The notes below the pieces were generated by a model. It was not told where the DNA came from. It saw nothing but the letters and a program-made list of their open reading frames with translations, and ran no database searches. From contig NW_027266272.1 in NCBI RefSeq assembly GCF_022045235.1, positions 13,268,001-13,332,000 on the forward strand: a DNA stretch of 64,000 nucleotides. Reading direction: 5' to 3'. The translations under genes were made by a program, and so were the position numbers. Source of the stretch: Haliotis cracherodii (lineage: Eukaryota). Shown in pieces: positions 8,401 through 47,646 of the stretch; position 1 is the first letter of the stretch; every line of letters begins with the position of its first letter.

Positions 8401-11400
8401 TGTTATTTACAGAGCTAGCGATTGTTATTTTTTAATCCCCTGACTTGCGTAAGCGGTTTGCTCTCTGACTTACATTAAAGGGTATTTTCTTTTCTTTCTT
8501 TTTTTCTTTCGAGATAACGATGTACTCTGGCACATATATAACACGTGCAGGTTTGACCGCAGTTCAGCAGAACTTTATGGCAAGTAGTAGTAATAGGAAA
8601 AATAATTTAAGTGCAAATACGTAATATTGGTTAGAAGTTTTTAACTTCTGTGTTAATAAAATGTATAATTTCAAACTTTTTCATTACAGTATGAGTAATT
8701 GAGCAGACGGACTTTAGTCAGAATGGGAACCGAAAACAAAGATGTCGCAGAGAAACGAGATTCGGCAGTGGGCAAGGTTAAAGGGCCAGGAGGCAAAGGT
8801 AGGTCTCTTCCACACAGACGTGTCTGAGTTCGAGCCCCTATCAATATAACAATGTCGGGTTCGAAAGCCATCCCAATATTATTTCGTAACCATTTTCTTG
8901 ATCACTTAATTACAATCGAAATATGAAACTAGTTTTTCAAGGGTCATTGTCACCTTGTCATTATTTATTTACTTTGTGAAAAAAATGAAAAAGTTATCAA
9001 CGTTAATGTTGTATTAATGAGAATATTTTCCCATGTCTGTATAGTCCATCTTTATATAAAATCACAGGGAAAAGTACCTCGCTTACGCCTGAAGCGAATC
9101 ATTAACACATAAAACACAAAATGCGTACGCCATCTTGACGCGCGCATGGCCCCCAGATGGCGCTGTAGTTTCGCCTGAAGCATGTCACACATCCTTAACG
9201 ACCTCTTTCTCCAAATAGTATCATTGTTGTCACTATTATCAGCTGGCAAAGCTCCCAGTTCAATATCTTACTCTTCTATCGCCTGTAACATTCAGAGAAG
9301 TTTCCGTTAACGACCACTGAACTTTGACATCTGTTTGACCTTGAAGACCGTTGACACCGTAAGGGAGATGGTCGCCTTTAAAGACAAATCCATTAAACTA
9401 CGGTTATAACGAACTCAAAGGAAACACTACTGTTTGTTCGTTATAACTGTTCCTTGTAAGCACATATACAGCATATTAACAGCTAATGGCCGGGACCAAA
9501 AAATAGTTCCTTATATCCGTCAGTTCGTTATAAGCGTGTTCGTTATAACCGTTTACTGTATACCTAGCACAGTAATAATTACGTAAACTCAGAGTGACAG
9601 ATACGTCCTGTGTAAATAGGGATGTTTGCATAAAATACGTCATTAATATACTAGTATGCGATATACGTTATCTGATGACGTCAGGCGGTCGGGTAGCCTA
9701 GTGGTTAAAGCGTTCGCTCGTCACGCCGAAGACCCGGGTTCGATTCCCGACATTGGTACAATGTGTGAAGCCCATTTCTGGTGTCTCCCGCCGTGATATT
9801 GCTGGAATATTGCTAAAAGCGGCGTAAAACCATACTCACTCACTCACTCTGATGACGTCGAGCCAATGATCGCTATTTGTTTCAGTGTTCAAGAGGAGTA
9901 CGTCGATGTATCTCAACGTCGTAGCCCCACACAAGCCTATCCGGCCCAGCATCGTGGAAGAAGATGAGGAAGATATCATGCGTAAGTGTACAATACAATT
10001 TCGGCCACACTCAGCAGCAATATGTGAGCGATTGAGCAAGGATCACCGCCGTTTGAACAGTATTTCAGTTATATAGTGGCGTTTCATCTTAGTGTAGAAG
10101 CCTAAAGCAGGTTCTGATTACCACTTTGATGAAACCAAGGGAATGGGTCGATTTTGACAGACCGTGAATTATCGGGGTTGACCTGAGATTCGAACCTACG
10201 ACTGGCGAGACCTATGACCATGGGACCATTGAACCACCATTTACCCCATTTACTTGGTATTCCATGATGTCAGGCGTACCTGGTGGTATCATAGGTATGT
10301 TATCGCGCTACCTCCGTATATTGCCCCGTAAACATATCTACTAATTATCTACATGTTCTATGTAAACAGACCCGTCAAGATCCGGGTAGAATGGGTCTTC
10401 AGCAACCCATGCTTGCCGTAAAAGGTTACTATGCTTGTCGTAAGAGGCGACTAACAGGATCGGGTGGTCAGGCTCGCTGACTTGGTTGATGCATGTCATC
10501 GTGTACCAATTTCGTGGAACGATGCTGATGATGTCAATCACTGGATTGTCTAACCGGACTCGATTATTAACAGACCGCCGTCATATAGCTTGACTATTGT
10601 TGAGTGCGGCGGTAAACAACAAACAAACAAACATATGTAAACACGAGCAACAGAGATTGATGTTTAGCGTTTTCCAATATTCAGCCGACGGTTCCAAGTT
10701 CACTCTGTACGGGGACGATGACTACGTTCCGTCCGAGCGTATCCAGGGCCTCCTCAACAGCGTCACCGACATCAAACATCGCGCACACAAAGTCTTTTCC
10801 GAGATGGACGTGCTCAAGAAGCGGGGAGAGGACTTTGAGTGGAGAGAAGTCGCCAGGTGAGACCAAAATCAGTGACTAGCCAAGCCAACTAAGGAGTGTC
10901 ACAGAAAATGTCGTAAGCATAAATGGTGCAGAACCTTTTAATCGATTCGGTTAATGTGAGACTTCTTGTTCTCTTGTAGCCGAGACTTTGATGAGTCCTG
11001 ACTTTAAAGCTCCGCAGAAGTACGCTAGTTTTCCATGCTACCTTGTCCAGTCTTGTAACCATGGTTACTGTTTCAGATGGGTCAAGTACGAGGAGAAAAT
11101 GGAGGAGGGAGGAGAACGCTGGTCCAAGCCTCACGTGGCGTCCCTGTCCATGCACCATCTTGTTGAAACTAGGAGGCAGCTGATGGACGGTGTCATGCAC
11201 CTCGATACAGAGGCCTACTCCATCTCCCAAGTCGTTGGTACGTCATCACGTTACTCCGCATCACAAACGCTGAACTAATCTAGACAATGGCAGCATCCAT
11301 GTGTCTGTAGAAACTGTCGATAGCAACATATTACAGTAGGCTATCACAGATTCAAGCGGGACTGGGCTCTGAGCAAATGCAGTTTGATTCAAATGAAGAC

Positions 11401-17400: not shown

Positions 17401-20400
17401 ATCGTGTTAGACATTAATAAACCGGCCATGTTGATGCAGGTCGTAAATCACGAAAGATGAAATGAACACCTTTTGATGGATGTCATGATGAAACAGACAC
17501 CTGTTTAACATACATTTCATATCTCGCCAGTCTAGCATATACATACAACCTTATTAACATCAGATGTCACCATGCACTACTGTAAAAGTGTACACCGGAC
17601 AATTATCATCGCTTTATCTCATAAACACTGAAGGCTCGCTAACCAAGTAAATACGTATGGTAATAAAAAGTATTTGTGGAGAGTTTCAATTCGTCTCGAC
17701 TAAAGTTCAAAGAAATTCAATGTGTTTGTTATCGACAGGTGATAGCCTCGGGCGTTGGTACTACTTAAATCGATAATATATCTACATCAGTAGGTCATTC
17801 TCATCAACGTCTTCTGTTTGTTTTGCAGAGAACAAAGAGTCACCGCTCTTCTTGTAGGAATCCTCAGTGGTCTGGCTGTGCTCATCACAAATGTCCTGAA
17901 GGTAAATTGACAATGTCTCTTCATGAATATCCTGGATTAATACGTCAACGAATCTGATATAAAGTTCCCCATCGGAATAGGTGATATTTCCGGAATTATG
18001 CTAAAAGCAGCGTAAAACCATACTCACTCGCGATAGGTTACTGGTGTTTTGTTCATCTATCTCTTTGAAGGCAGAACATACAACAGCAACGTTGGTTTCT
18101 TTTGTGCCCTAACTACTGTTTGTTTGTTTGTTTGTTTGTTTGTTGTTTAACGCCGCACTCAGCAATATTCAAGCTATATGACGGCGGTCTGTAAATAATC
18201 GAGTCTTGACCAGACACAGACTTTGTAGGATTTGTAAAACTGATTGTACTGAAGATGAATATCACTTTTTATGTGTATGTCCAGTGTATGAAGATTTAAG
18301 AGCAAAATATCTAAATAACTATTTCTACCGCAGCCCAAACGGTAACAAATTTTGTAAATTAATGACTTGTGATTGTACAGAAACTATTAGAAATCTATCA
18401 ATGTTCATTTATCATGCCATGAAACTAAGAAAATGTATGAATTTGTAACATGCCCCACACATTGTACTATAGGCCTTTGGCCTCATAAGTACCATGAATA
18501 AAGATTGATTGATTGACCAGACAATCCAGTGATTGACATCATCAGCATCGATCCACGTAATCTGGATACGATGACATGCATCAACCAAGTCAGCGAGCCT
18601 GACCACCCGATCCCGTTAGTCGCCTCTTATACGACAAGCAGCCTTATCCACTAACTATTTGACTAGTATTTGTCTGTCTTGTTACTCACGGTGTCGTTGT
18701 GTTACAGGTCATTCCTATGCCTGTGCTATATGGTGTCTTCTTCTACATGGGATTCTCGGCCCTCAAGGGAATGCAGGTAAGACTCAGACCCTCTCAGACA
18801 CCTTTCATCCGAGCACACTAACCGTCCGGCTACCCATGTCATACAGCAAAATGTCTATCTATATGTATATAGAGAACCGTCTATGTTGTCTAGATACATC
18901 TATTTATATCGTTGTGTATCTCACAGTGTTCTGGGGAGTTCTTTAGCCACACCAGGATCCGATGACCATGAGTTCGAATCCCATAATTGCCCATTGTGTC
19001 ATCCGCCGTGATATTGCTTTAAAATATTGCTGGTGTAAAACAATATTCACTCAGTCCTCATTAAACATTATAACTGACATTATATTTGTTCCGACCAGAT
19101 GATAATCAATCATTCACAAATCAAGTTTTAGTTTGTCGACATGTATAGCCTGTCTCTCTGGTTATATATCACATGTATGTTTTCTGTTACAGTTTATCGA
19201 CCGGTTGCTCCTGTTCTTCATGCCCAGCAAGTATCAGCCCGATTACCCCTACCTACGTCACGTCCGTCTCTGGCGCGTACACATCTTCACCTTCGTCCAG
19301 ATCCTCTGCTTGGTGGCTCTGTGGGTCGTAAAGAGCATCAAGAGCATCTCCATCGGCTTCCCCCTCCTGGTACGTCATCATCTACGACACAACAGTGACA
19401 TCTGCGTTGCAGTGTACCCAATATTACTGCACAAACTAAACGTTGTCACCGTTGTCCAGTGGACCCAGTCGCAGTATATTACTGTGCAGAGTTGTGCCCC
19501 TTAGTCGAGCTAGGTCCTGGGTTCGAATCCCAATTTCGATTCAATGCTTGGTCCTTCACATCCGTGGTCTTCGGTTTACCAAACTTGTAAACTCTACAAC
19601 CTCCAACACAGGATAACCTGCCGCCCTCATCCGGGATATAATTTGTAGTTCTGTTCATACCCGCCCAAATCACCATCGTTATTTAAGACTGGTCTTCACA
19701 AACCAAGACGATCGATTTCTTTGTTTGTTTGTTTTTTAACGCCTCACTCAGCAATAATCCAGCTATATGACGGCGGTCTGTGTAAATAATCGAGACAATC
19801 CAGTGATTGACATCATTAGCATCGATCCACGCAATACGATGACATGCATCAACCAAGTCAGCGAGCCTGACCACCCGATCCCTCGTCGCCTCTAACAACA
19901 AGCATAGTCGCCTTTTACGGCAAGCATGGGTTGCTGGAGGCCAATTCTACCCGGATCTTCACGACATTGATGCTTAGAAGACATATGTATTGGATATAAG
20001 TATTCAAAAAAACGAACTGTGTCACGTGCTTCAATGTGTATGTAAATGATTTGCAAATGAATATGAACTTACATTAAACAACACGACCATTAATCAACAA
20101 TGTAACTTTCGTCGACAGGTTGTGTTCACCGGCGTAGTCAGGAAGATCTTAGACTGTGTGTTCAGCCAATATGAGCTGAAGTACCTGGACGACCTCCTCC
20201 CCAACTCAAAGAAAGACAAGGTCAAGGACTCCGAGAAGGTAAGGAGACAATCTCCGACTGTACATTTTAACAAGGAGCAGGAATTGGAATAGTTTAAACA
20301 TTTAAAAAAAAACCAGACCGGTTTCGTAACAAGGTTGGTCGTGTCATCGAGTTACCATCAAAATAAATATAATACTTTGAGGTAAATGTGTAAATATTCA

Positions 20401-21674: not shown

Positions 21675-21734
21675 TGAATTTTTTTTGCAATTATTTTTTG
21701 TTTTTTAATTCTTCAAATCTTACACAGTAAAGAT

Positions 21735-21952
21735 TGTTTCTTGTCTAACGCCGCACTCAGCAATATTCCAGCTGTATGACAGCGGTCTGGACCAGACAAT
21801 CCAGTGATTGACATCATGAGCATCGATCTACACAATTGGGATACGATGACATGCATCAACCAAGTCAGCAAGCCTGACCATCCGATCCCGTTAGGCGCCC
21901 CTTACAAGCATGTGTTGCTGAAGACCAATTTTAAATCGGATCTTCTAAGGGT
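21735..21952 (-). mobile_element. SINE family 2
   Basis: Reverse-complement consensus match. Confidence 0.8.
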
Positions 21953-22280
21953 GGCACACATGTCACGTGACCTGCGACGTGCTCACATTCATTGTTAGAG
22001 CTCATCAGCTGACAACTTTAGACTATGAATGAGCAACATAACACTGATTACGGCACACTCATAACATATACAATAACACTAACTAAGGCACACTCATGAT
22101 ATGTAAAATAACACTGACTAAGGCACACTGGTTCCCGTTCATAAACTGATAGAGGGTCACAGATGGCATAGTGGTCTAAGGCGACGCATTTCACATTATG
22201 ATCCGATCATCACTGTACAACTGACATAGTTAAATGCCGGGTAAGACTAGGAACGATGGTTTAACTACTCGTAGCTTAAC

Positions 22281-25005: not shown

Positions 25006-25137
25006 NNNNNNNNNNNNNNNNNNNNNNNNNNNNNNNNNNNNNNNNNNNNNNNNNNNNNNNNNNNNNNNNNNNNNNNNNNNNNNNNNNNNNNNNNNNNNNN
25101 NNNNNNNNNNNNNNNNNNNNNNNNNNNNNNNNNNNNN
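25006..25137. other. assembly gap (132 N)
   Basis: Run of n. Confidence 1.
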
Positions 25138-30639: not shown

Positions 30640-30902
30640 GTTGTTTTGTATGTTTGATGTTTAACACCGCAGTCAGCAATATTACAGCTATGGGAAGGCG
30701 GTCTGTAAATAATCGAGTTTGGACCAAAGAATCCAGTGAATGACATCATGAGCATCGATCCACGAAATTAGGATACAATGACATGCATGAACCAAGTCAG
30801 CGAGCCTGACCACCCGATCCCGTTAGTCGCCTGTTACGACAAGCATAGTAGCCTTTTAGGGCAAGGATGAAGACCTATTCTATCACGGATCTTTACGGGC
30901 CG
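30640..30902 (-). mobile_element. SINE family 2
   Basis: Reverse-complement match; absent from the paralogous flank at about 36990-37030. Confidence 0.85.
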
Positions 30903-31157
30903 TACGCAGTTGTCATGTGAGGCAGGCAGACAAAACGATTCGTGAGAATGAAACCAATAACACGTCATCTTTTCCTGACACTCCTTTAGTAGACACAGAA
31001 AATGCATGTAACCCATCACATCCTGAAATTTGAATATGGCACAACTTAATTAATAAGCACAACAGTGAATCGTGAGAACAAGAAAAAAAGCTTCTAAATA
31101 CTGGGAAGAAATAGTTCTTTTTTAATGTACAGTAATATGTTATCCGGTTTCTCTCAG

Positions 31158-31354
31158 CTAAACATAAAATACGAGTTGAGAGGCTGCTGCCATGGTCACA
31201 AACACGACAAACAGAATCGTGTCTAGTCTGTCAGCAAATTCATCTTTCTTGATGGTACTGTTTCCAAATCTGTGACCTTAACCTTCTGACGGAAGTGACA
31301 AAGCAGCGCCGCCTGTCGGTGGTGAGTGTTCATGACAAGGAGTGTTGCGAGCAG
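31158..31354 (-). pseudogene. 3' remnant (end of M3, M4, stop) of a third Cys-loop receptor copy (copy C)
   Basis: Aligns to about 37231-37455 of copy A with a 25-nt frameshifting deletion in the M3-M4 loop. The upstream CDS is missing and unrelated AT-rich DNA lies in its place. Flanks are homologous to those of copy A. Confidence 0.9.
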
Positions 31355-32502
31355 TGATGGCCAGAATGATAAGCTAAACACAAAATCACTGATACGAATG
31401 TGACCAAAAAGAAATAAAGTCGGGGCTCAGCGATTCTACAACATTAATAATTCTCTCTGTGATTTTGCCTTCAGGTTAACATTAAAATAATCTACAATTA
31501 AATACAAGTTGAAGTCCAAAATCTTACAGGTTTAAATCTAAAATCGCGTTGGACGAGGGACAAGCTGTTTTATGTATGACTTTTTAAAAAAAAACCCAGG
31601 TATTCATCAAGCAAGGAAATGTGGATGAAAAGACATTTGAAATTTGTGTAAAAGTCACACTTTGTAAAAAAAGTTATCAATGTTATTATAATACCCAGTG
31701 AATAAAAAAACTGCTGTCTCGAAATAGTACTTAATAATTATTCTTATTTCCCGTCAATGCATCCTTTAAATCCCCTGTCTTCCTGTATTTTGAAAAGGTA
31801 GTCATAATATCTTTCCTTATAGCAGCAAAACGAAAATGATGAAGGACATATTGGAGATTTTGCGAAAAGTCCCCCAAAATAGATGACGGTCATGCATTTA
31901 CGTGTTATGTTATAAGGACATATTATTAGTGTTTATTTTAATTTTCATAATAATTATGTCACTAAATCTGGAACCAACTTTAGGAATGTATTTATCCGTA
32001 TTCCAATATCTTAATAAGATATGAGTTGGTATTTCTCTAGTTGCAATATCCAACTTTTAATTTCTAAATCACGACAGTGTCAAAGCATACAAATTATATA
32101 TGCCATTATTCTAGTAATCGTTTCCATCAAATAATTGGGTCCTTTTTTAAAACTGTGCAAGGTGCGATGGAGGGAGGTACAAATTGTGTGTCGTAACCGG
32201 TTCCACTAATGGTATGCGCCGCAAGCTATACACGTTTGAAGGCAACTGTAGACAGGAGTCGAGTTAAGAATATTCGTACCTGCACCGTTGAAGATTTCGA
32301 TTGCAGCACGGATCGCTATATTAGATCCAAGCCGTCTCACAATGGCACTTGTGTTGGTTTGTGCAAGTGGTAAAGGACAATTGTATGGTGATTGTAAAGT
32401 TGACTGTAGGCGCCTAAGATCGATTTGTACTAAGATTGTTCTACGCAAGTAGGCCCAGGTCAGTTAACATGCCCAATGCCGTTGTTTTGTCATACGAGGG
32501 TA

Positions 32503-32745
32503 TTGTTTGTTTGTTTGTTTAACGCCACACTCAGCAATACTCCAGCTATATGACGACAGTCTGAAAATAAACGAATCTGGACCAGGCAATCCAGTGAATG
32601 ATATCACGGGTATCCATCTACGCAATTGAGATCGATAACAAGCATCAACCAAGTCTGCGAGCCTGGCCACCAGATCCCGTTAGTCGCCTCCTACGACAAG
32701 CATAGTCGCCTCTTACGGCAAGCATGGTTGCTGAAGACCTATTCA
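32503..32745 (-). mobile_element. SINE family 2
   Basis: Reverse-complement consensus match. Confidence 0.85.
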
Positions 32746-36670: not shown

Positions 36671-37230
36671 TAAACCAATCTAAGAAGACGTACGGATGGA
36701 AACATACATATAAAATGCATTCCAACATTTAATTAAGAATACGTTTTACCTTAGGGATAAGCTGGGCATTAAATAGCTGGACCAACAACGAACAGCGTGA
36801 CTGACACCATTTCTCGCAAATACGAAACAACGGAGATTGCTCCCGTTTGAAATTAGAGTGACCTCCCTTCCCCAATATGAACCTCTGATATTACGGTTTC
36901 GCGTATATAAGACATAATTTCAGCCTGTTGGCTACCTGAAAATGGATACACTGTTGAGCTGTTTAGATCATTTGTCTTTTACCGTCAATTGATTGAATGA
37001 ATATATTATGTGAGCCAGTTGATAAGAGAGATTCGACATAATGAAACCAATAACACGCCATCTTTAGTGACACTCCTTTAGTAGACACAGAAAATGCAAG
37101 TGACCAATCGCATCCTTAAACGCGAATATGGCACATCTAAATTAATAAGCACAACAGTGAATCGTGAGAACAAGAAGATTACTAATTGTTTAGCAAATAG
37201 TTCAATTTGGTGTAATCCGGTTTCTCTCAG

Positions 37231-38376
37231 CTAAACATAAAATACGAGTATAGAGGCTGCTGCCATGGTCACAAACATGACAAACAGAATCTTGTCTAGT
37301 CTGTTAGCAGCTTCATCTTTCTGGATGCCACTGAGTTCATTCCAAGCACTGGGTTTATTGTCCAAATCTGTAACCTTGACCTTCTTACTGAAGCGGCAAA
37401 GCAACGCCCCCTGTCGGTGGTGAGTGTTTATGACCAGGAGAGTGGCGAGCAGAGCCAGGGCGCTCTGTGACAGAAGCAGAACCAGATAGATGGTGAGGCG
37501 GGAGGCATTGCCGGACTTGGGGATAGCGTCATTGATGTAGTTGAGGAACACTGCTCCAGACACGAAGATGGAGACGAGGAAGGAGATCTTTTCCCCCGAG
37601 GCCGCGGGCAGCAGGAATACACAGGCGTTGAGGAAGGAGAGAAGACACATTGGAAAGATGACGCTTAGGGTGTAGAAGATGCTGTGACGCCGGAGTCGGA
37701 ACTTGACATCAATATAAGGTAAAGCGTCGTAGAATGCATGAAAGTGCTTCTCGTGGAATGTAGTGTTGACCAACTCCCACTCACTGCTGCCAGTGAAATA
37801 TGCAGAGAAAATATCACTAAGGCCTTGACTACGCAAATAAAGTCTTGAGTCTAATAAGCCGAGAAATGACATGTGACACTCCTGTTCATCATATGGATAC
37901 CTTGTCACATCTAAATTGCAAATTGTCTCAAATTCATCAATTATAAACATCAATGTCGTTCCAGTAGAACGTACATTGATAGGCATACTTGCGGTTAAGG
38001 AGGAAATCTTGTTACCCACAGCGTTTGGAATTATAAAGTTTGGAGTCCATATCTCTTCAGACTTAAAGGCAAGGCTTTCGACACCGTTGGTGTTGTTCCA
38101 CGTCAGCCATGGATCCTTCCAAGACATAGTCAGAGAGCCACTGAGACGAAATATCTGACTGGCTTCTTCCACAGCTACAACAGCTATGGGGGCGAAGGAC
38201 AATGATACATTGACGCGGTTGCCCGTCCCATAGGGCGACACCGTGGTGGAGTAGTTGTACAGGAGATCCTGCTTCAGTTGCTGCTGTCGCCGTCTCTCAG
38301 GGTCCGCTTCACCATGGCAACAGCTCAACAAACTAATACAACATACAATCCAAGCCGTATCTTTAAGATTGCCCAT
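37231..38376 (-). CDS. divergent nAChR-like Cys-loop ligand-gated cation channel subunit, single coding exon (copy A), 381 aa
   Basis: Signal peptide, WKDPWLTW, IWTP, Cys-loop CNLDVTRYPYDEQEC, SSEW, LRR, four TM helices, SGEKIS at the M2 start. No vicinal CC in loop C. A splice acceptor (ttttatag) lies 9 nt upstream of the ATG, suggesting a 5'UTR intron only. Confidence 0.95.
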   Translation of the reverse strand: MGNLKDTAWIVCCISLLSCCHGEADPERRRQQQLKQDLLYNYSTTVSPYGTGNRVNVSLSFAPIAVVAVEEASQIFRLSGSLTMSWKDPWLTWNNTNGVESLAFKSEEIWTPNFIIPNAVGNKISSLTASMPINVRSTGTTLMFIIDEFETICNLDVTRYPYDEQECHMSFLGLLDSRLYLRSQGLSDIFSAYFTGSSEWELVNTTFHEKHFHAFYDALPYIDVKFRLRRHSIFYTLSVIFPMCLLSFLNACVFLLPAASGEKISFLVSIFVSGAVFLNYINDAIPKSGNASRLTIYLVLLLSQSALALLATLLVINTHHRQGALLCRFSKKVKVTDLDNKPSAWNELSGIQKDEAANRLDKILFVMFVTMAAASILVFYV

Positions 38377-38477
38377 GTCTTACGTCTATAAAATAATCAA
38401 AGGTGATATTAATTTTGTCTGTACAGAACCACACTAGCAACACACCGTGAGAACACGAAGTACGCACACTTGATAAT

Positions 38478-38788
38478 CAGGGGAAGATCCTGTTTCTGAT
38501 GAACATGAAGTCTGTACTGTCAATGTACAGGGAAAGATCCCGTTTCTGGTGAACACGAAGACTGTACTGTCAATGTACAGGGAGAGATCCTGTTTCTGGT
38601 GAACACGAAGACTGTACTGTCAATGCACAGGGAGAGATCCTGTTTCTGATGAACACGAAGTCCGTACTGCCAATGTCCAGGGAAAGATCCTGTTTCTGAT
38701 GAACACGAAGTCCGTACTGCCAATGTACAGGGAGAGATCCTGTTTCTGATGAACACGAAGTCCGTACTGCCAATGTCCAGGGAGAGAT
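38478..38788. repeat. 50-bp minisatellite, about 6 copies, just upstream of receptor copy A
   Basis: caatgtacagggagagatcctgtttctg(a/g)tgaacacgaag.c.gtactg(t/c). Confidence 0.95.
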
Positions 38789-39518
38789 GCTGTCGTCTAG
38801 CCACACACCAGGAGTGCTGCAATGCCTAATGTCGTCGTTTTTTTCATACGCGGGTATTAAATAAAAGCTGCAGGGGACAATGAGTTTCGTCAATGAATTG
38901 CCACGTGCGCCTTTTATTTGCCTTGATCTGTAGAGAACAATGGACAAAACAGGAGCCAACACGGGCGACAATGACTATTGTTTATTCGCCATTAGAGAAA
39001 GTTTACTGGCGATGTATTGGGCATCAATTGTTTTACGGACACATAATTACAGATTGTTTTCAACAGGAAGCATTCACATTCTAGAAGCACTATGACAACA
39101 AAACGGTTCCTTTAGTCAAATAATAATTTGAATAGAAGATGTTTAAATAAAATGTTAATAGTTAATGTTTTTTAGTGTAGAAGTACTAAAGACGTTCATC
39201 ATCAGAGGAGTTTGGTTAGAACCTTTCGGGTACATTTTACCGTGTTATACAAACGATGGAATTGGCAAACATCATTGTTCGGAGTTATACAGCACGTGTA
39301 GGCGTCACGTTGGCAGCAATGTGAGGCTATTTGATGTCAGTTACCACGTGCAGCAGAGTGGAATATGTGATATAATTACACTATGGCGTGTCAGCTTATG
39401 TTGGACGAAAGCCCCAAGGACGCATGTCCTCAACGTTTATCACTTACGTAAATTCACGCGCTCGGGTATGAACTACCCCCGAGGATCGAGTGGTCAGGCT
39501 CGGCGACGTGGCTGAAAG

Positions 39519-39764
39519 CTTTGTTTGTTTGTTTGTTTGTTGGGTTGTTTTACGCCGCACTCAGCAATATGACGGCGGTCTGTAAATAATCGAGTTTGGA
39601 CCAGACAATCCAGTGATTAACATCATGAGCATCGATTGGGATTGGGATTGATGACAGCGAGCCTAACCACCCGAAACCCGTTTGTCACCTCTTACAACAT
39701 ACAGTCGCCTTTTACGGCAAGCATGGGTTGCTGGGGACCTACTCTACCCCGGAACTAACGGGCC
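39519..39764 (-). mobile_element. SINE family 2
   Basis: Reverse-complement consensus match. Confidence 0.85.
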
Positions 39765-39872
39765 TGAAAGCTTGGTATTGTATCCCGACGGCGAGGATCG
39801 TTGATCACACTGTCAGTGAGCTTTTTAGTCTGTTCCAGAACCGATTAGTTACAAGTCATCGTCGTAGAGCTG

Positions 39873-39985
39873 AAACATCAACAACAACAAAGTGCAACAT
39901 CAACAACAACAAAGTGCAACATCAACAACAACAAAGTGCAACAACAACAACACCAACAAAGAGAAACAAACAACATCAACAAAGA
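39873..39985. repeat. (CAA)-rich short tandem repeat
   Basis: aacatcaacaacaacaaagtgc x3. Confidence 0.85.
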
Positions 39986-40620
39986 AGACACGTCACGTAT
40001 CACTCAAATGTCTACACTGTCTAGTTTTACACTGGATATGTAGTTGCTAAGTATTAAGCGATATGATATTTTGAAATATTTTAAACAAACTGATGAAAAA
40101 TTCCTTGTCCTTTCAATAAGCAAATTTGTTTGTATCATATTTTTACGTAAAGGAACATCAGTGCTTAACGTACCAGTATGATAAACTGATTAATTTCCAT
40201 TCAGCTAAACCGTTCAAATATTCAGTTAAAACCTTGTGTTGTTGCTATTATAAAACTATATCGTAATTGGTGTATTATAGGGCGTTTGGTCACATTAGAC
40301 GGAATTAACAAATATTATGCACGTGAAACTGATGCAACTATAGGTCATTATGTAAATTATAGAGAAATAATATATCAGCCATGACACTCGAATATATGGG
40401 TTCTTGAAGTGGAATCAACGAGCCCCGATTCTCATAATGTCTCCATAATCTGATGTCGGTATTTCACTTTTGTGTATTTTTGGAAAGGTTTTTATCGGGT
40501 CATATATTTAAACTTTATGCTTTAATTAAAAAAGAATATGAGAGACTGTTCATTGATTTTAGGGTTAGATTAATGCCCCTTCGCCTCAAATGCCTATGGC
40601 ATTCTTTCATGACACATGTC

Positions 40621-40871
40621 GACCCGTGAAGATCCGGGGTAGAATAGGTCTTCAGCAATCTATTCATGCCGTAAAAGGTGACTAACGGGATCGGGTGGTC
40701 AGGCTGGTTGACTTGGTTGATGCATGTCATCGTATCCCAATTGCGTGGATCGATGCTCATGATGTCAATAACTGGATTGTCTGGTTCAGACTCGATTATT
40801 TACAGAATGCCGTCATATAGCTGTAATACTGCTGAGTGCGGCGTTAAACAACAAACAAACAAACAAACAAA
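40621..40871 (+). mobile_element. SINE family 2, full length, single-hairpin variant
   Basis: TSD tcatgacac(a/g)tgtc. Confidence 0.9.
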
Positions 40872-41368
40872 TCATGACACGTGTCGCTCTCAGTGAAAAG
40901 TGTAGATATATCAGTAACGCACCTAAACCTTTCCCTGACAACGACAGCTGTATCGGCCAAAACACCTACGCTTACAACAAAGAAACCATGGCAACGAGTC
41001 CGGAATTATACATAACGAGTACGCATATTGGCTTATCATATGTAACTCCATCTTGCTAAAACGTGGTAGAAATGAAAGGGATTCAAGTATTAAACAGACA
41101 CTGTTCTCTAGCGGTAGAGGTTTTGTAAGTCTACATCGTTCTGCTTGTAAAGCAAACACGTTTTTGTGTTAAGTGATCGCGTGATCGACGTGTGCTATTA
41201 GAGAGAGTAGTTAATAAACGATACGCTCAAGTCATATATAATTTCTCTGCACAGGCCTGAGGCGTGGAACCTTTTGCCAATAACTCCGGAGTTTGCATTA
41301 CAATGTATTCAACTGAAGTAATTTCGCGTGTCACGTACTAGTCTGCACAGTTGTACGAAAGCCTCACG

Positions 41369-41543
41369 TTGCCACTTTTGGTAGCATAGTTGTTGTTTTT
41401 CAATTTCGATTCCTTTTTCTTCATTTCGATTATTTTCATGGCATTCAAAGTTTGAAAAATCGAAAGTTCGAAAAATTACACAAATAATTGAAGTAACGAG
41501 ATATTTCGATGTAAAAAAATATAATTATGCTACCAAAGTGGCA
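41369..41543. mobile_element. small inverted-repeat element
   Basis: tgccactt(t)tggtagcata / tatgctaccaaagtggca. Confidence 0.55.
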
Positions 41544-41903
41544 CCATTATTGTTTGGGTGCAGTAGCAAACAGGTGCTTCACCTGTGTCATCGACATGGT
41601 ATGTATGGAACTTATCATGCATTATTACCTGTGTATGGATGAGTGAGTGAGTTGGGCTTAACGTCGGACTGAACAGTATTCTAGTTATATCACGACGTGT
41701 CAGCTTCATGTAAAGGAAAACCCCGAAGTGGTGCAGGTCTCAGACATTTACCGATTTGTTTAAATATGGAAACAAACTGCGAACAGTAGGATCGTTGTAA
41801 CAATTTATACATATCAAGAAGAAGTTTAACTTCGGGATTGCCCTTAGATAGTAGTTAAAGAACAGAGGATCAAATGATTTTACTTCTGTAACAGTTCTTT
41901 TTA

Positions 41904-44900
41904 TCTATACCCACTGACAACACAATCTTCTCCACTGTGTGACATGTGGTTCTATACCTAATGACAACACTATCTTCTCCACTGACTGTGTGACATGTGG
42001 TTCTGTACCCACTGACAACACTATCTTCTCCACTGATTGATTGACGTGAGGTTCTATACCTAATGACAACACTATCTTCTGCACTGACTTTGTGACGTGT
42101 GGTTCTATACCCACTGACAACACTATCTACTGCACTGACTGTGTGACGTGTGGTTCTATACCCACTGACAACACTATCTTCTCCACTATGTGACATGTGG
42201 TTCTATACCCACTGACAACACTATTTTCTCCACTGACTGTGTGACGTGAGGTTCTATACCCACTGACAACACTATCTACTGCACTGACTGTGTGACGTGT
42301 GGTTCTATACCCACTGACAACACTATCTACTGCACTGACTGTGTGACATGTGGTTCTATACCCACTGACAACACTATCTACTGCACTGACTGTGTGACGT
42401 GTGGTTCTATACCCACTGACAACACTATCTTCTCCACTGACTGTGTGACGCGAGGTTCTATACCCAATGATAACACTATCTACTGCACTGACTGTGTGAC
42501 GTGTGGTTCTATACCCACTGACAACACTATATTCTCCACTGATTGTGTGACGTGTGGTTCTATACCCCCTGACAACACTATCTTCTCCACTGACTGTGTG
42601 ACGTGTGGTTCTATACCCACTGACAACACTATCTACTGCACTGACTGTGTGACGTGTGGTTCTATACCCACTGATAACACTATATTCTCCACTGATTGTG
42701 TGACGTGTGGTTCTATACCCACTGACAACACTATCTTCTCCACTGACTGTGTGACATGTGGTTCTATACCCACTGACAACACTATCTACTGCACTGACTG
42801 TGTGACGTGTGGTTCTATACCCACTGACAACACTATCTACTGCACTGACTATGTGACGTGAGGTTCTATACCCACTGACAACACTATCTTCCCCACTGAC
42901 TGTGTGAGGTGTGGTTCTATACCCACTGACAACACTATCTTCTGCACTGACTGTGTGACGTGTGGTTCTATACCCACTGACAAAACTATCTTCTCCACTA
43001 TGTGACGTGTGGTTCTATACCCACTGACAACACTATCTTCTCCACTGACTGTGCGAGGTGTGGTTCTATACCCACTGACAACACTATCTTCAGCACTGAC
43101 TGTGTGACGTGAGGTTCTATACCCACTCACAACACTATCTTCTCCACTGACTGTGTGACGTGTGGTTCTATACCCACTGACAACACTATCTTCTCCACTG
43201 ACTGTGTGACGTGTGGTTCTATACCCACTGACAACACTATCTACTGCACTGACTGTGTGACGTGTGGTTCTATACCCACTGACAACACTATCTACTGCAC
43301 TGACTGTGTGACGTGAGGTTCTATACCCACTGACAACACTATCTTCTCCACTGACTGTGTGACATGTGGTTCTATACCCACTGACAACACTATCTACTGC
43401 ACTGACTGTGTGACGTGTGGTTCTATACCCACTGACAACACTATCTTCTCCACTGACTGTGTGACGCGAGGTTCTATACCCACTGACAACACTATCTACT
43501 GCACTGACTGTGTGACGTGTGGTTCTATACCCACTGACAACACTATATTCTCCACTGATTGTGTGACGTGTGGTTCTATACCCACTGACAACACTATCTT
43601 CTCCACTGACTGTGTGACGTGTGGTTCTATACCCACTGACAACACTATCTACTGCACTGACTGTGTGACGTGTGGTTCTATACCCACTGACAACACTATC
43701 TACTGCACTGACTGTGTGACGTGTGGTTCTATACCCACTGACAAAACTATCTTCTCCACTATGTGACGTGTGGTTCTATACCCACTGACAACACTATCTT
43801 CTCCACTGACTGTGCGAGGTGTGGTTCTATACCCACTGACAACACTATCTTCTCCACTGACTGTGTGACGTGTGGTAATATACCCACTGACAACACTATC
43901 TTCTGCACTGATTGTGTGACGTGTGGTTCTATACCCACTGACAAAACTATCTTCTCCACTATGTGACGTGTGGTTCTATACCCACTGACAACACTATCTT
44001 CTCCACTGACTGTGCGAGGTGTGGTTCTATACCCACTGACAACACTATCTTCTCCACTGATTGTGTGACGTGAGGTTCTATACCCACTGACAACACTATA
44101 TTCTCCACTATGTGACATGTGGTTCTATACCCACTGACAACACTATCTACTGCACTGACTGTGTGACGTGTGGTTCTATACCATCTCACAACACTATCTT
44201 CTCCACTGACTGTGTGAGGTGTGGTTCTATACCCACTGACAACACTATCTTCTCCACTGATTGTGTGACGTGTGGTTCTATACCCACTGACAACACTATC
44301 TACTGCACTGACTGTGTGACGTGTGGTTCTATACCCACTGACAACACTATCTACTGCACTGACTGTGTGACGTGTGGTTCTATACCCACTGACAACACTA
44401 TCTTCAGCACTGACTGTGTGACATGAGGTTCTATACCCACTCACAACACTATCTTCTGCACTGACTGTGTGACGTGTGGTTCTATACCAACTGACAACAC
44501 TATCTTCTCCACTGATTGTGTGACGTGAGGTTCTATACCCACTGACAACACTATATTCTCCACTATGTGACATGTGGTTCTATACCCACTGACAACACTA
44601 TCTACTGCACTGACTGTGTGACGTGTGGTTCTATACCATCTCACAACACTATCTTCTCCACTGACTGTGTGAGGTGTGGTTCTATACCCACTGACAACAC
44701 TATCTTCTCCACTGATTGTGTGACGTGAGGTTCTATACCCACTGACAACACTATATTCTCCACTGACTGTGTGACGTGTGGTTCTATACCCCCTGACAAC
44801 ACTATCTTCTCCACTGACTGTGTGACGTGTGGTTCTATACCCACTGACAACACTATCTTCTCCACTGATTGTGTGACGTGTGGTTCTATACCCACTGACA

Positions 44901-45500
44901 ACACTATCTTCTCCACTGACTATGTGACATGTGGTTCTATACCCACTGACAACACTATCTACTGCACTGACTGTGTGACGTGTGGTTCTATACCATCTCA
45001 CAACACTATCTTCTCCACTGACTGTGTGACGTGTGGTTCTATACCCACTGACAACACTATCTTCTCCACTGATTGTGTGACGTGAGGTTCTATACCCACT
45101 GACAACACTATATTCTCCACTGACTGTGTGACGTGTGGTTCTATACCCACTGACAACACTATTTTCTCCACTGATTGTGTGAAGTGAGGTTCTATACCCA
45201 CTGACAACACTATCTTCTCCACTGACTGTGTGACGTGAAGTTCTATACCCACTGACAACACTGGGTATAGAACCTCACGATCTTCTCCACTGTGTGACAT
45301 GTGGTTCTGTACCAACTGAAAACACTATGTTCTCTTCTGACTGTGTGACGTGTGGTTCTATATCCAATGATAACACTATCTTCTGCACTGACTGTGTGAC
45401 GTAAGGTTCTATACCCACTAAAACGCTATCTTCTGCACTGACTGTGTGACGTGAGGTTCTATACCCACTGACAACACGATATTCTCCGCTGACCGTGTGA
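41904..45500. repeat. 51-bp satellite (about 70 copies, with 47-bp variants) between the two intact receptor genes
   Basis: gtgtgacgtgtggttctatacccactgacaacactatcttctccactgact. Confidence 0.98.
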
Positions 45501-45957
45501 ATATTGCTCTTTGGCTTATCGCAATACTTACTAATAAATCCATTCCTTGTGGCAAAAGAACAGGCAGTACAGAAAGTATTTACTACATTGCTTAAGTGTC
45601 AAAATGTCAAATTACAAATTGTGAATGTATAATGTGAAATGATATACTCAGTTGAAAATACTGACATTAGTGAATGGCCAGCAAGTCACAATACTACAAA
45701 AAACAACTTCTAGACATTCAATCAAACTGAGACGACATATCTTATACTGAATACATATACACTACACACGATCACACGTTGGTATTCAGAGTACTTGGAA
45801 CACGTGCAGCAATCGAGTTCAGACAGAAAAACAGTTTTAAAGCATACGTGGCTTTTAGTATCGTGTTCACAGTGGTCTTCGTCATAATATCGTATTGATG
45901 TAAGCATATTTTACAAAGTATTTACATCACATAAAGTACCAAAAGTTGTCATTTGGG

Positions 45958-46325
45958 CATTATTATTATTATCATTTACAGATTAACATAAAAAAATGCA
46001 GCAAAGAGGGTTTGGGTGATCCTGGCACAGACAGACTGGTTAGGCTCATCACCAGCTCAGGGCCCTTGCCCCTCTACAAGCATCCCAGACAGCGAATGTG
46101 ACTCCTCCCAGGAAGCGCTGCCTAAAGAAACCCACCAAGAACTTTTCGAAGAATGTGAAGACTCCCCAACACTGCAGCTTTCTGCATTAACCAGATTGTC
46201 AGAAGGGATGTATTCCTGGTAGCAAACCCGTGTTCTCTCCCAATGTCAATAAAATAATCGGGATGTTCCAAATCTAAGGCACTGAGAACAATGGGGAGTT
46301 GGGCAACTTGATAATCGAGATGCAA
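45958..46325 (-). mobile_element. 3' fragment of an RLE-type (R4/Dong-like) non-LTR retrotransposon
   Basis: PIVLSAL...MQKAAVLGSLHILRKVL* resembles the restriction-like endonuclease C-terminus; ends in (TAA)n. Confidence 0.7.
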
Positions 46326-46512
46326 GCGTTACATTTCGAAAGCGGGGTCTGCATATTTGCCATGTTTTTCCTGAATCTTGTCAATCACATTAGTGTCCAA
46401 AGGGACAAAAGATTCAGACATATTATTATTAAAATCTGGCCACCAGCCACTGTATAATGAAATGTTGAAAACAAAACGTTTATCACAATACCACAGTGAC
46501 TGGTATGTTATG

Positions 46513-47646
46513 CTATATACGAAACACAAGTATTGAGAGTGCGGCCATCAACACAAACAGGACAAACATAATTTTATCGAGTCTGTCTGCTGCTTCATCG
46601 TTCTTGATATCATCGCCTCTCTCCAATGGACTTGTGCTTTGAACTGCGATCTTCTTACGGAGGCGACAAAGCAACGCTCCCTGTCGGTGGTGAGTGTTTA
46701 TGACCAGGAGAGTGGCGAGCAGAGCCAGGGCGCTCTGTGACAGAAGCAGAACCAGATAGATGGTGAGGCGGGAGGCAATGCCGGACTTGGGGATAGCGTC
46801 ATTGATGTAGTTGAGGAACACTGCTTCGGACACGAAGATGGAGACGAGGAAGGAGACCTTCTCCCCCGAGGCCGCGGGCAGCAGGAATACACAGGCGTTG
46901 AGGAAGGAGAGAAGACACATTGGAAAGATGACGCTTAGGGTGTAGAAGATGCTGTGACGCCGTAGTCGGAATTCGAGATCAACGTACGGAATACGGTCAG
47001 CGACTCGTTTAACGCTAATGGTTTTGTTAACCAAATCCCATTCACTGCTACCAGTAAAGTATGTAGAAAAAATGTTGGTATATTCTTGATTTCCCAGTCC
47101 AAAATCTGAGGAGTTTAACAAACTGATAACAGTTATGCGACACACCTGTTCATCATAAGGATACCGTACCACATCCAAATTACAAATTGTCTCAAATTCA
47201 TTAATCATGAACATGATTGCCGTGCCAGAATGGTCAACGGAGATGGGCACACTTGCGGACAAAGAGGAAATCTTGCTACCTACACCGTTTGCAATCACGA
47301 TCTTCGGGGTCCATATCTCCTCAGGTTCAAATTCAAGCTTTTCGATATCATTGCTCCTGTCCCATGTCAACCAAGGATCCGTCCAAGACAAAGTCAGAGC
47401 GCCACTTAAGCGGAATATCTGATTGGCTTCTTCCACGGCTATCACAGCTATGACAGCGAATGACACAGAGACCATGACCCGACTTGCCGTTCCTTTGGGC
47501 GACACCGTGGTGGAGTAGTTGTACAGGAGATCCTGCTTCAGTCGTTGCTGTCGTCGTCTCTCAGGGTCCGCTTCACCATGGCAACATCTCAACAAAAACA
47601 CCACGGACAACATCAAAGCAGCATAGTTGAATAGAACACTCTGCAT
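46513..47646 (-). CDS. divergent nAChR-like Cys-loop ligand-gated cation channel subunit, single coding exon (copy B), about 377 aa
   Basis: Paralogue of copy A: Cys-loop CNLDVVRYPYDEQVC, SGEKVS, four TM helices. Start placed at ATG 47646 (MQSVLFNYAALMLSVVFLLRCCHG) because it gives a signal peptide aligned with copy A; the ORF track extends to 47736. Confidence 0.93.
   Translation of the reverse strand: MQSVLFNYAALMLSVVFLLRCCHGEADPERRRQQRLKQDLLYNYSTTVSPKGTASRVMVSVSFAVIAVIAVEEANQIFRLSGALTLSWTDPWLTWDRSNDIEKLEFEPEEIWTPKIVIANGVGSKISSLSASVPISVDHSGTAIMFMINEFETICNLDVVRYPYDEQVCRITVISLLNSSDFGLGNQEYTNIFSTYFTGSSEWDLVNKTISVKRVADRIPYVDLEFRLRRHSIFYTLSVIFPMCLLSFLNACVFLLPAASGEKVSFLVSIFVSEAVFLNYINDAIPKSGIASRLTIYLVLLLSQSALALLATLLVINTHHRQGALLCRLRKKIAVQSTSPLERGDDIKNDEAADRLDKIMFVLFVLMAALSILVFRI

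What the first reader, a model, noticed from the sequence alone, without database searches (positions are those of the whole stretch)
37411..46970. Constant pore, variable sensor: gene conversion homogenises the M1-M3 block between receptor paralogues
Seen: 37411-37700 and 46681-46970 differ at only about 6 of 290 nt including synonymous sites (3 aa changes). The extracellular domains are only about 60% identical in protein, and the M3-M4 loop, M4 and 3' flanks have diverged. Pseudogene C shares flanks and M4 with A, so it is A's sister duplicate. Yet over a 44-nt stretch at the end of M3, A and B are identical while C differs at 5 sites. Inference: recurrent ectopic conversion keeps the assembly and pore module interchangeable while ligand-binding domains diversify, which would favour combinatorial heteropentamers.
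Basis: partly seen in the sequence, partly recalled or inferred. Interest (0 to 1): 0.85.

Follow-up and report, generated by a model that had tools for sequence, protein, structure and literature searches.

The report
Pore-domain gene conversion between abalone receptor paralogues
Two neighbouring abalone ion-channel receptor genes, and a third copy 2.9 Mb away, keep an almost identical 300-base pore-forming segment by copying it between themselves while the rest of each gene diverges; this is a clear new example of a known evolutionary process, and other clusters of the family show it too.

Summary
Gene A (37231-38376, minus) and gene B (46513-47646, minus) are intact, intronless nAChR-like Cys-loop receptor genes, apparently of Haliotis cracherodii. 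Between 37411-37700 and 46681-46970 they differ at 6 of 290 nt (3 aa).

- **Synonymous divergence:** dS is about 0.04-0.06 in M1-M3, 0.9 in the ECD and 0.7 in loop+M4 (0 of 20,000 permutations).
- **Artefact:** contigs from an independent run of the same species and from two related species reproduce the junctions.
- **Synonymous constraint:** young duplicates and unconverted clusters of the family have M1-M3 dS at or above ECD dS.
- **Recurrence:** a third paralogue, D, carries the same block (dS about 0.15-0.2 against 1.5-2.4 elsewhere). A second 100-nt A-B island lies at the mature N-terminus. Against H. asinina proteins, M1-M3 groups by species and the ECD by orthology. At least five other clusters show the same homogenisation, with the same pre-M1 boundary.

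The best reading is recurrent, region-restricted ectopic gene conversion. The heteropentamer purpose is untested; tract ends bracketed by hypervariable, indel-bearing loops explain the boundaries equally well. Comparable cases are TLR1/TLR6 and the protocadherins. My searches found no such report for pentameric channels.

The parts
37231..38376 (-). Gene A: intact intronless nAChR-like Cys-loop receptor ORF, 381 aa
   Evidence: ORF list. Pfam Neur_chan_LBD 2.2e-31 and Neur_chan_memb 6.9e-12. Best solved relatives are nAChR alpha-7 and alpha-1, E about 1e-33.
46513..47646 (-). Gene B: intact intronless paralogue, 377 aa from the ATG at 47646. The open frame continues upstream to 47736.
   Evidence: It is 70% identical to A in protein.
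37397..37692 (-). M1-M3 converted tract in A, from pre-M1 'RLRRHSIF' to post-M3 'THHRQGALLC'
   Evidence: 296 nt with 6 mismatches to B, against 28% elsewhere, LLR 59.6. dS 0.04-0.06. GC3 0.75 against 0.45 in the ECD.
46667..46962 (-). M1-M3 converted tract in B
   Evidence: It is the second of only three high-identity copies of the block in the 1.18-Gb genome: 100%, 97% and 93%, with the next best at 77%.
38233..38332 (-). Second homogenised island in A, covering the end of the signal peptide and the mature N-terminus (LLSCCHGEADPERRRQQQLKQDLLYNYSTTVSP)
   Evidence: 100 nt with 4 mismatches to B, against 31% in the rest of the upstream part, LLR 20.9. dS is 0.10 A-B but 1.1-1.9 to D. GC3 is 0.63-0.70 in A and B against 0.43 in D.
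47497..47596 (-). Second homogenised island in B
30937..31357 (-). Fragment C: a truncated pseudogene remnant covering the last third of M3, the loop with a 25-nt deletion, M4 and the 3' flank. Its flank marks it as a sister copy of A.
   Evidence: 78% identity to A 37030-37452 over 443 nt. Alignment A1. It keeps ATG (Met) where A and B share ATA (Ile).

Best explanation
Recurrent, region-restricted ectopic (non-allelic) gene conversion between paralogous intronless nAChR-like pentameric channel genes.

**Shown**
- A roughly 300-nt patch encoding pre-M1 through M3 is near-identical at synonymous sites in A and B, which lie 9.3 kb apart in the same orientation.
- The same patch is shared at an older age with D, which lies 2.9 Mb away in the opposite orientation.
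- The ECD, the M3-M4 loop, M4 and the flanks are old and divergent.
- A second 100-nt patch at the mature N-terminus is shared by A and B only.
- The same pore-block homogenisation recurs in other clusters of the family, and in H. asinina at protein level.

**Inferred**
- The patches arise when double-strand breaks are repaired with a paralogue as template. Tracts are short and non-reciprocal.
- Tract ends fall where the loop-C region and the M3-M4 loop have become too divergent and indel-ridden for heteroduplex extension.
- Purifying selection on the pore block keeps enough identity for the next exchange, so the process feeds itself. Diversification of the ligand-binding surface lets the rest escape concerted evolution.
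- GC-biased conversion may contribute to the raised GC3 of the patches.
For: **Depth of the dS trough**
- A-B: M1-M3 0.04-0.06, ECD 0.90, loop+M4 0.64-0.71.
- A-D and B-D: M1-M3 0.15-0.21, ECD 1.5-2.4, loop+M4 1.2-1.3.
- Discrete boundaries in all three pairs, with maximum-likelihood segments of 296, 286 and 284 nt.
- 0 of 20,000 permutations reach the observed run.

**No intrinsic synonymous constraint on M1-M3**
- Against the outgroup paralogues pS is 0.705, compared with 0.712 in the ECD.
- Across 90 family genes, pairs with ECD dS below 0.3 have an M1-M3/ECD ratio of 1.1-2.0.
- Clusters C27, C12 at 68.6 Mb and C2 at 30.06 Mb show no trough.

**Phylogenetic conflict with H. asinina proteins**
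- The ECD rejects species clades (AU p 0.003 and 0.0009).
- M1-M3 rejects orthology clades (p 0.033 and 0.024).
- The three H. asinina copies group together at 92/90 support.

**Other support**
- C, D and the H. asinina proteins keep Met at a site where A and B share a derived Ile codon.
- Other clusters repeat the pattern with the same pre-M1 boundary: C56 at 25.6 Mb, C5 at 35.6 Mb, C3 at 35.1 Mb, C78, and C2 at 30.9 Mb against C2 at 31.9 Mb.
- GC3 is 0.71-0.75 in the block against 0.44 in the ECD. In the N-terminal island it is 0.63-0.70 in the converted A and B against 0.43 in the unconverted D.

**Real in independent data**
- Run X5, same species but another study, has contigs with 0-2 differences that cross both block boundaries in A's context.
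- Its loose ends match the contexts of B and D exactly.
- Word depth rises two- to four-fold inside the block.
- In related species C, a single 683-nt contig spans the whole block and both flanks.
Against: - The cross-species conflict rests on protein sequences and on only 2-3 informative M1-M3 residues. The clades were named after the trees had been seen.
- Within this lineage two M1-M3 events plus one N-terminal event are enough, so 'recurrent' is a minimum of a few events, not a measured rate.
- M1-M3 GC3 is also raised (0.64) in cluster C12 at 68.6 Mb, which shows no current homogenisation. Codon preference in hydrophobic segments may therefore explain part of the GC3 signal.
- The raw-read run gave only 2 reads, so the read-level check rests on Logan contigs rather than on spanning long reads.
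- Four A-specific differences cluster within 36 nt (37556-37591) and are not explained.
Confidence: 0.85

Rival explanations
1. One reading: the tract limits are set by selection for a common pore and assembly chassis. Subunits with different ligand-binding domains can then co-assemble into many heteropentamers, and conversion is maintained because it serves this.
For: - Tract boundaries coincide with the ECD/TMD junction in A-B, in A-D and B-D, and in several independent clusters.
- M1-M3 carries the pore and the inter-subunit transmembrane contacts (general knowledge of pentameric channels).
- dN/dS in the block is about 0.2.
- Cephalopod nAChR-derived chemotactile receptors form both homopentamers and heteropentamers (review PMC11526382).
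Against: - Nothing was tested here on expression, co-expression or assembly. RNA-labelled runs of the same species held none of the sampled words.
- The boundaries also coincide with the most divergent, indel-bearing segments, with nucleotide identity of 0.40-0.41 just upstream of M1 and indels in both loops. Those would limit homology-dependent exchange without any such selection.
- A second island lies in the ECD. In cluster C56 at 25.6 Mb the tract includes M4, which lies at the periphery of the channel (by general knowledge).
- Some clusters show no homogenisation at all.
Confidence: 0.2
2. A single, fortuitous recent conversion event between A and B, with no tendency to recur and no regional rule.
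For: The A-B M1-M3 tract alone needs only one event, about 2% divergence ago.
Against: - D carries the same tract with the same limits at an older age.
- A separate N-terminal island exists.
- H. asinina paralogues share species-specific M1-M3 residues.
- At least five other clusters show M1-M3-centred troughs.
Confidence: 0.07
3. No exchange at all: the block is conserved by purifying selection that extends to synonymous sites, through codon bias, mRNA structure or a local drop in mutation rate.
For: - M1-M3 is the most conserved protein segment of the family.
- It has raised GC3 in most clusters.
- Between clusters, the share of same-amino-acid codons that use different codons is somewhat lower in M1-M3 than in the ECD, about 0.5 against 0.6.
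Against: - Young duplicates have M1-M3 dS equal to or above ECD dS, with ratios of 1.1-2.0.
- Unconverted clusters have ratios of about 0.7-1.4.
- Distant pairs are saturated in both regions, pS 0.75 against 0.79.
- M1-M3 dS between A and the outgroup paralogues is 2.1.
- Constraint does not predict the tree conflict.
Confidence: 0.03
4. An assembly, collapse or polishing artefact copied one paralogue's block onto the other.
For: Near-identical 300-nt repeats can be mis-polished in some assemblies.
Against: - The copies still differ at 6 (A-B) and 13-15 (D) sites.
- Contigs from an independent run of the same species reproduce A's junctions. Their loose ends give the B and D contexts.
- Related species B and C show the same structure, including one contig that spans the whole block.
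Confidence: 0.02

Closest known systems
Regional gene conversion between mammalian TLR1 and TLR6 (Kruithof et al. 2007, PMC2077338)
   Same: - Tandem receptor paralogues.
- The N-terminal ligand-binding part follows orthology, while a defined downstream region that includes the transmembrane segment is more alike between paralogues than between orthologues.
- Conversion events are independent in each species, with almost identical tract limits.
   Different: - A different protein family: a single-pass LRR/TIR receptor rather than a pentameric channel.
- The TLR tract is about 300 amino acids; here it is about 100 amino acids (300 nt).
- Here one partner lies 2.9 Mb away in inverted orientation, and many clusters of a family of more than 100 genes are involved.
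Regional gene conversion in clustered protocadherins (Noonan et al. 2004, cited in Yu et al. 2007, PMC1852091)
   Same: - Large tandem arrays of neural or sensory surface receptors.
- The 3' part of each variable exon is homogenised among paralogues while the 5' ectodomains stay diverse.
- GC3 is raised in the converted regions.
- Converted regions must be left out of trees.
   Different: In protocadherins the homogenised part is membrane-proximal ectodomain and cytoplasmic sequence. Here it is the pore-forming M1-M3 helices of an ion channel, bounded on both sides by divergent sequence inside one exon.
Expanded intronless molluscan nAChR genes (Jiao et al. 2019, PMC6896357)
   Same: The same kind of genes: intronless nAChR-like genes in tandem arrays, highly diverse in sequence, in a mollusc.
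   Different: - That paper does not contain the terms 'gene conversion', 'recombination' or 'Haliotis'.
- It reads species-wise clustering of paralogues as expansion after speciation. The concerted evolution shown here is an alternative source of such clustering.
Cephalopod chemotactile receptors (octopus CRT1, PDB 8EIS; review PMC11526382)
   Same: nAChR-derived molluscan pentameric channels that have lost the acetylcholine site and diversify in the binding pocket; they are reported to form both homopentamers and heteropentamers. A and B also lack TrpB, TyrA, TrpD and the loop-C Cys-Cys in the alpha-7 alignment.
   Different: A is closer in sequence to vertebrate alpha-7 and alpha-1 (E about 1e-33) than to 8EIS (2e-20). 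This looks like a separate gastropod expansion. No ligand, tissue or conversion data link the two.

Membership tests
Pentameric ligand-gated (Cys-loop) ion channel, nAChR-like cationic branch | N-terminal ligand-binding domain followed by the channel transmembrane domain | tested here: met
   PF02931 at 2.2e-31 and 6.5e-32, and PF02932 at 6.9e-12 and 5.3e-12, in A and B respectively. nAChR alpha-7 and alpha-1 are the best solved relatives.
Pentameric ligand-gated (Cys-loop) ion channel, nAChR-like cationic branch | Cys-loop: two cysteines separated by 13 residues, with the conserved aromatic-Pro-aromatic-Asp core | tested here: met
   A has C-NLDVTRYPYDEQE-C and B has C-NLDVVRYPYDEQV-C (translations).
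Pentameric ligand-gated (Cys-loop) ion channel, nAChR-like cationic branch | M2 with the intermediate-ring Glu (-1') of cation-selective members | tested here: met
   SGEK precedes M2 and aligns to SGEK of alpha-7. Ion selectivity itself was not measured.
Acetylcholine-gated receptor in the strict sense | Aromatic box (TyrA, TrpB, TyrC, TrpD) and, for alpha subunits, the vicinal Cys-Cys of loop C | tested here: not met
   In the alpha-7 alignment TrpB aligns to Leu, TyrA to Pro and TrpD to Ser/Leu. The loop-C 'YECC' aligns to 'YDAL'. This is read from a pairwise sequence alignment, not from a structure.
Cephalopod chemotactile receptor family | Closest sequence relationship to octopus or squid CRs | tested here: not met
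   8EIS scores 2.1e-20, well below alpha-7 and alpha-1 at about 1e-33.
Region-restricted concerted evolution by ectopic gene conversion | Paralogue identity at synonymous sites inside a discrete tract far above that of both flanks | tested here: met
   dS is 0.04-0.06 in the tract against 0.90 and 0.64-0.71 in the flanks. The segment LLR is 59.6. 0 of 20,000 permutations reach the observed run.
Region-restricted concerted evolution by ectopic gene conversion | Tree of the tract conflicts with the tree of the flanks: paralogues group by species in the tract and by orthology outside it | tested here: met
   Protein trees and AU tests with three H. asinina homologues. Few sites are informative, the clades were named after the trees had been seen, and no orthologue DNA was available.
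Region-restricted concerted evolution by ectopic gene conversion | Not explained by local synonymous constraint or a low mutation rate | tested here: met
   Young pairs and unconverted clusters have an M1-M3/ECD dS ratio of about 1 or more. Distant pairs are saturated in both regions.
Region-restricted concerted evolution by ectopic gene conversion | Raised GC3 in converted tracts (GC-biased conversion) | tested here: inconclusive
   GC3 is 0.71-0.75 in the tract against 0.44 in the ECD. In the N-terminal island it is 0.63-0.70 in A and B against 0.43 in the unconverted D. However, M1-M3 GC3 is also raised in a cluster with no current homogenisation.
Region-restricted concerted evolution by ectopic gene conversion | The mosaic exists in independent sequence data | tested here: met
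   Logan contigs of an independent run of the same species and of two related species. The loose ends were identified as the B and D contexts.

The most novel reading that the evidence does not exclude
In abalone, and perhaps in molluscs generally, the massively expanded nAChR-derived receptors evolve as a shared pore chassis with private sensor domains. On this reading conversion tracts are held to the ECD/TMD junction by selection, not only by homology. Paralogues across distances of up to megabases would then remain able to co-assemble, giving a combinatorial repertoire of heteropentameric sensory channels. Part of the reported 'lineage-specific expansion' of these genes would be an artefact of this concerted evolution.
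Probability: 0.2. Interest if true: 0.7.

Novelty: new member of a known kind. Interest (0 to 1): 0.5.

Why it matters
- **Modularity.** It gives a natural demonstration that the ligand-binding and pore modules of a pentameric channel can have separate evolutionary histories inside a single exon. The junction lies where engineered ECD/TMD chimeras are usually joined (my own knowledge, not checked here).
- **Phylogeny.** Full-length trees of expanded molluscan nAChR-like genes will be pulled towards species-wise clustering by the homogenised pore block. Published inferences of expansion after speciation (PMC6896357) should be rechecked with ECD-only trees, as is done for protocadherins (PMC1852091).
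- **Experiments.** It names a small, well-defined trio (A, B, D) with near-identical pores and sensors 52-60% identical. That is a convenient set for asking whether such paralogues co-assemble and what their sensors detect.

Tried and rejected

No H. asinina DNA could be fetched, so the cross-species test is at protein level only.
- The only raw-read run (X21) yielded 2 reads at the sampled depth and says nothing.
- The RNA-labelled runs of the same species held none of the sampled words. Expression therefore remains open. The 683-nt contig in run X15 is only guessed to be RNA.

**Explanations rejected**
- Synonymous constraint, rejected on the family controls.
- Assembly artefact, rejected.
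- Hypermutation of the ECD as the real anomaly. M4, the loop and the flanks are as old as the ECD.
- Membership of the cephalopod chemotactile receptor family, not supported by sequence.

**Limits of individual lines of evidence**
- GC-biased conversion is supported only suggestively.

**Not run, or empty**
- Searches for gene conversion in Cys-loop, ligand-gated or chemotactile receptor papers found no report of this in the paralogous families examined here.

Full report
**What is there**

The finding covers two intact, intronless ORFs on the minus strand. A is 37231-38376 (381 aa). B is 46513-47646 (377 aa from its ATG). Both carry the Pfam ligand-binding and transmembrane domains of neurotransmitter-gated channels. 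Their best solved relatives are nAChR alpha-7 and alpha-1, at E about 1e-33.

The window is G000:C9:13268001-13332000 of a 1.18-Gb genome with at least 108 family matches, mostly in tandem arrays. The third-closest paralogue is D, at C9:16238243-16239370 on the plus strand (locus L003). It lies 2.9 Mb away in the opposite orientation. Its translation is identical to a protein that NCBI names from Haliotis cracherodii. I therefore take the organism to be that abalone; this is an inference.

In the alpha-7 alignment A lacks TrpB, TyrA, TrpD and the loop-C Cys-Cys. It keeps the SGEK motif before M2. It is thus an nAChR-derived, probably cationic, channel that is unlikely to bind acetylcholine. 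This agrees with earlier scan note s1-831972.

**Checking the observation**

- 37411-37700 and 46681-46970 differ at 6 of 290 nt, giving 3 amino-acid changes.
- The maximum-likelihood low-divergence segment is A 37397-37692 against B 46667-46962. It has 296 nt at 2.0% divergence, against 28.0% in the rest of the CDS.
- The ECD outside the N-terminal island is 60.3% identical in protein, and loop+M4 is 53%.
- dS is 0.063 in M1-M3 (0.041 with slightly narrower limits), 0.90 in the ECD and 0.64-0.71 in loop+M4.
- No permutation out of 20,000 reaches the observed run, whether all positions or only third positions are used.
- A-B nucleotide homology ends at the CDS; the flanks do not align.

D carries the same block with nearly the same limits.
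- A-D: 286 nt at 5.2% divergence, against 34.7% elsewhere.
- B-D: 284 nt at 4.6% divergence, against 38.9% elsewhere.
- D's M1-M3 dS to A and B is 0.15-0.21. ECD dS is 1.5-2.4 and loop+M4 dS is 1.2-1.3.

The block exists in exactly three high-identity copies in the genome: 100%, 97% and 93%. The next best match is 77%. There is also the 53-nt remnant in C.

A second island of 100 nt is shared by A and B but not by D. It lies at A 38233-38332 and B 47497-47596, with 4 mismatches. Its dS is 0.10 between A and B and 1.1-1.9 to D. I found it before seeing scan note s1-832067, which describes the same island.

At least two M1-M3 events of different age, plus one N-terminal event, are needed in this lineage.

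**Pseudogene C**

C (30937-31357, minus) aligns to A from the last third of M3 through M4 and about 250 nt of 3' flank. It has a 25-nt deletion in the loop. B's flank is unrelated. The count of 5 differences in 44 nt is correct.

Four of those differences are private to C. The informative one is the codon for the Ile/Met residue near the end of M3. C and D have ATG, and the three H. asinina proteins also have Met there, while A and B share ATA. This fits a transfer between A and B after C split from A. It is, however, a single site.

**Artefact check**

Contigs of four public runs were laid on 36900-38440.
- In X5 (same species label, a different study), contigs with 0-2 differences cross both block boundaries in A's context, at 37220-37447 and 37663-38262.
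- Word depth rises from about 19-24 in the flanks to 40-96 in the block.
- Loose ends at the boundaries match B (window 46621-46640) and D (L003 2488-2509 and 2153-2173) exactly.
- Related species B shows the same rise in depth. One of its block unitigs is identical to A over 114 nt, while its A-type ECD differs by 3.3%.
- In species C a single 683-nt contig spans the block and both flanks.

The mosaic is real. Its age is comparable to, or younger than, the split between these close species. The raw-read run gave only 2 reads.

**Constraint check**

I extracted 90 family genes from 21 chromosomal locations.
- Pairs with ECD dS below 0.3 have an M1-M3/ECD dS ratio of 1.1-2.0.
- Pairs in the far range are saturated in both regions, with pS 0.75 against 0.79.
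- Clusters C27, C12 at 68.6 Mb and C2 at 30.06 Mb, with ECD dS of 0.6-1.7, have M1-M3 dS of 0.8-1.2.

M1-M3 therefore has no intrinsic deficit of synonymous change. The trough appears only in particular paralogue sets, as exchange predicts and constraint does not.

**Cross-species test**

- In the ECD, H. asinina P0003 and P0006 fall with A, and P0004 falls with B and D.
- In M1-M3 the three H. asinina proteins form one group at 92/90 support. They share Leu for His in pre-M1 and Ile for Thr after M3.
- AU tests on the ECD reject the species clades (p 0.003 and 0.0009).
- AU tests on M1-M3 reject the orthology clades (p 0.033 and 0.024).

The caveats are that few sites are informative and that the clades were named after the trees had been seen.

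**Family-wide recurrence**

The same pattern appears in other clusters.

| Cluster | ECD dS | M1-M3 dS | Note |
|---|---|---|---|
| C56 at 25.6 Mb | 0.87 | 0.03 | 5 of 5 pairs |
| C5 at 35.6 Mb | – | – | 50 of 85 older pairs have a ratio below 0.33 |
| C3 at 35.1 Mb | 0.34 | 0.04 | – |
| C78 | 0.59 | 0.19 | – |
| C2 at 30.9 Mb against C2 at 31.9 Mb | about 1.0 | 0.22-0.33 | arrays 1 Mb apart |

In each case nucleotide identity jumps from about 0.3-0.7 to 0.97-1.0 at the same pre-M1 position. In most it falls again after M3. In C56 at 25.6 Mb it continues through M4. The older C5 pairs also show a trough at the N-terminal helix.

**GC3**

GC3 is 0.71-0.75 in the A, B and D block against 0.44 in their ECDs. 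In the N-terminal island it is 0.63-0.70 in A and B against 0.43 in the unconverted D. Across clusters the M1-M3 excess is largest in homogenised clusters. It is absent in C27 and in a singleton gene. One unconverted cluster also has a large excess. This is suggestive of GC-biased conversion but not decisive.

**Mechanism**

Shown:
- Short internal patches are near-identical at silent sites among otherwise old paralogues.
- Exchange happened at least twice here, and it also occurred in other clusters and in another species.

Inferred:
- The patches are products of homologous repair templated on a paralogue.
- Their ends lie where the loop-C region and the M3-M4 loop are too divergent, and carry indels, for heteroduplex extension. 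Identity just upstream of M1 is 0.40-0.41, with a 3-codon indel, and the M3-M4 loop has a 4-codon indel.
- Purifying selection on the pore block (dN/dS about 0.2) preserves the homology that allows the next event. Divergence of the binding surface lets the ECD escape.

It was not tested, and it is not required.

**Comparison with what is known**

The phenomenon matches regional gene conversion in TLR1/TLR6. There the ligand-binding part follows orthology, the downstream part including the transmembrane segment is homogenised independently in each species, and the tract limits are constant (PMC2077338). It also matches the clustered protocadherins, including the raised GC3 and the need to exclude converted regions from trees (PMC1852091).

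The main paper on molluscan nAChR expansion does not mention gene conversion, recombination or Haliotis (PMC6896357). Four literature searches found no report for Cys-loop channels or chemotactile receptors. I therefore file this as a new member of a known kind.

**Limits**

- No orthologue DNA was available.
- No spanning long reads were available.
- There is no evidence on expression or assembly.
- The N run at 25006-25137 was left untouched.

Noticed in passing
window 41904-45262 (continuing in degenerate form to 45500): A 3.4-kb minisatellite of about 66 copies of a 51-nt unit (91% matches) fills much of the 8.1-kb spacer between genes A and B. It creates long spurious ORFs on both strands. 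Whether it promotes breaks or exchange between the flanking genes is unknown.
   Followed up: partly
window 38481-38793: A 50-nt tandem repeat, 6.3 copies at 92% matches, lies about 100 nt upstream of gene A's start codon. It also gives spurious ORFs.
   Followed up: no
laid on window 38236-38312 (runs X5 and X10): Contigs of another individual of the same species and of related species B share the N-terminal island. Upstream they continue into a context reading roughly '...LLLRCCC', which is absent from the window and from the whole reference genome at up to 2 mismatches. This is either a further paralogue or a divergent B allele that is missing from the assembly. It resembles the 'CCCEADP' start of H. 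asinina P0004.
   Followed up: partly
window 37556-37591: Four of the five internal A-B differences in the block cluster within 36 nt, and at all four B equals D. This could be a small B-D exchange, or a patch that A retained or acquired. It includes the M2 11' Gly/Glu and 1' Ile/Val changes. Run X10 suggests that some of these sites vary among copies in the sister species.
   Followed up: partly
G000:C56:25597007-25617048 (L027, L092-L094): This cluster is the most extreme case in the family. The ECDs are at dS 0.9-1.4, with only 40-70% nucleotide identity. From pre-M1 to the stop codon the genes are 97-100% identical (dS 0.03), so the whole transmembrane half is shared.
   Followed up: partly
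G000:C2:30.94-30.95 Mb (L022, L023) against C2:31.87-31.89 Mb (L028-L030): Two arrays 1 Mb apart share an M1-M3-only patch, with dS 0.22-0.33 against about 1.0 in the ECD and saturation in loop+M4. This is a second example of long-range exchange, like D.
   Followed up: partly
window 40620-40870, 30645-30902, 10369-10633, 19716-19963, 21734-21965, 32503-32705 and others: A dispersed repeat of about 250 nt, SINE-like, occurs in many copies in both orientations at 72-92% identity. One copy lies next to pseudogene C. Scan note s1-832187 concerns this family.
   Followed up: no
window 25006-25137: A run of 132 N, either an assembly gap or masked sequence.
   Followed up: no
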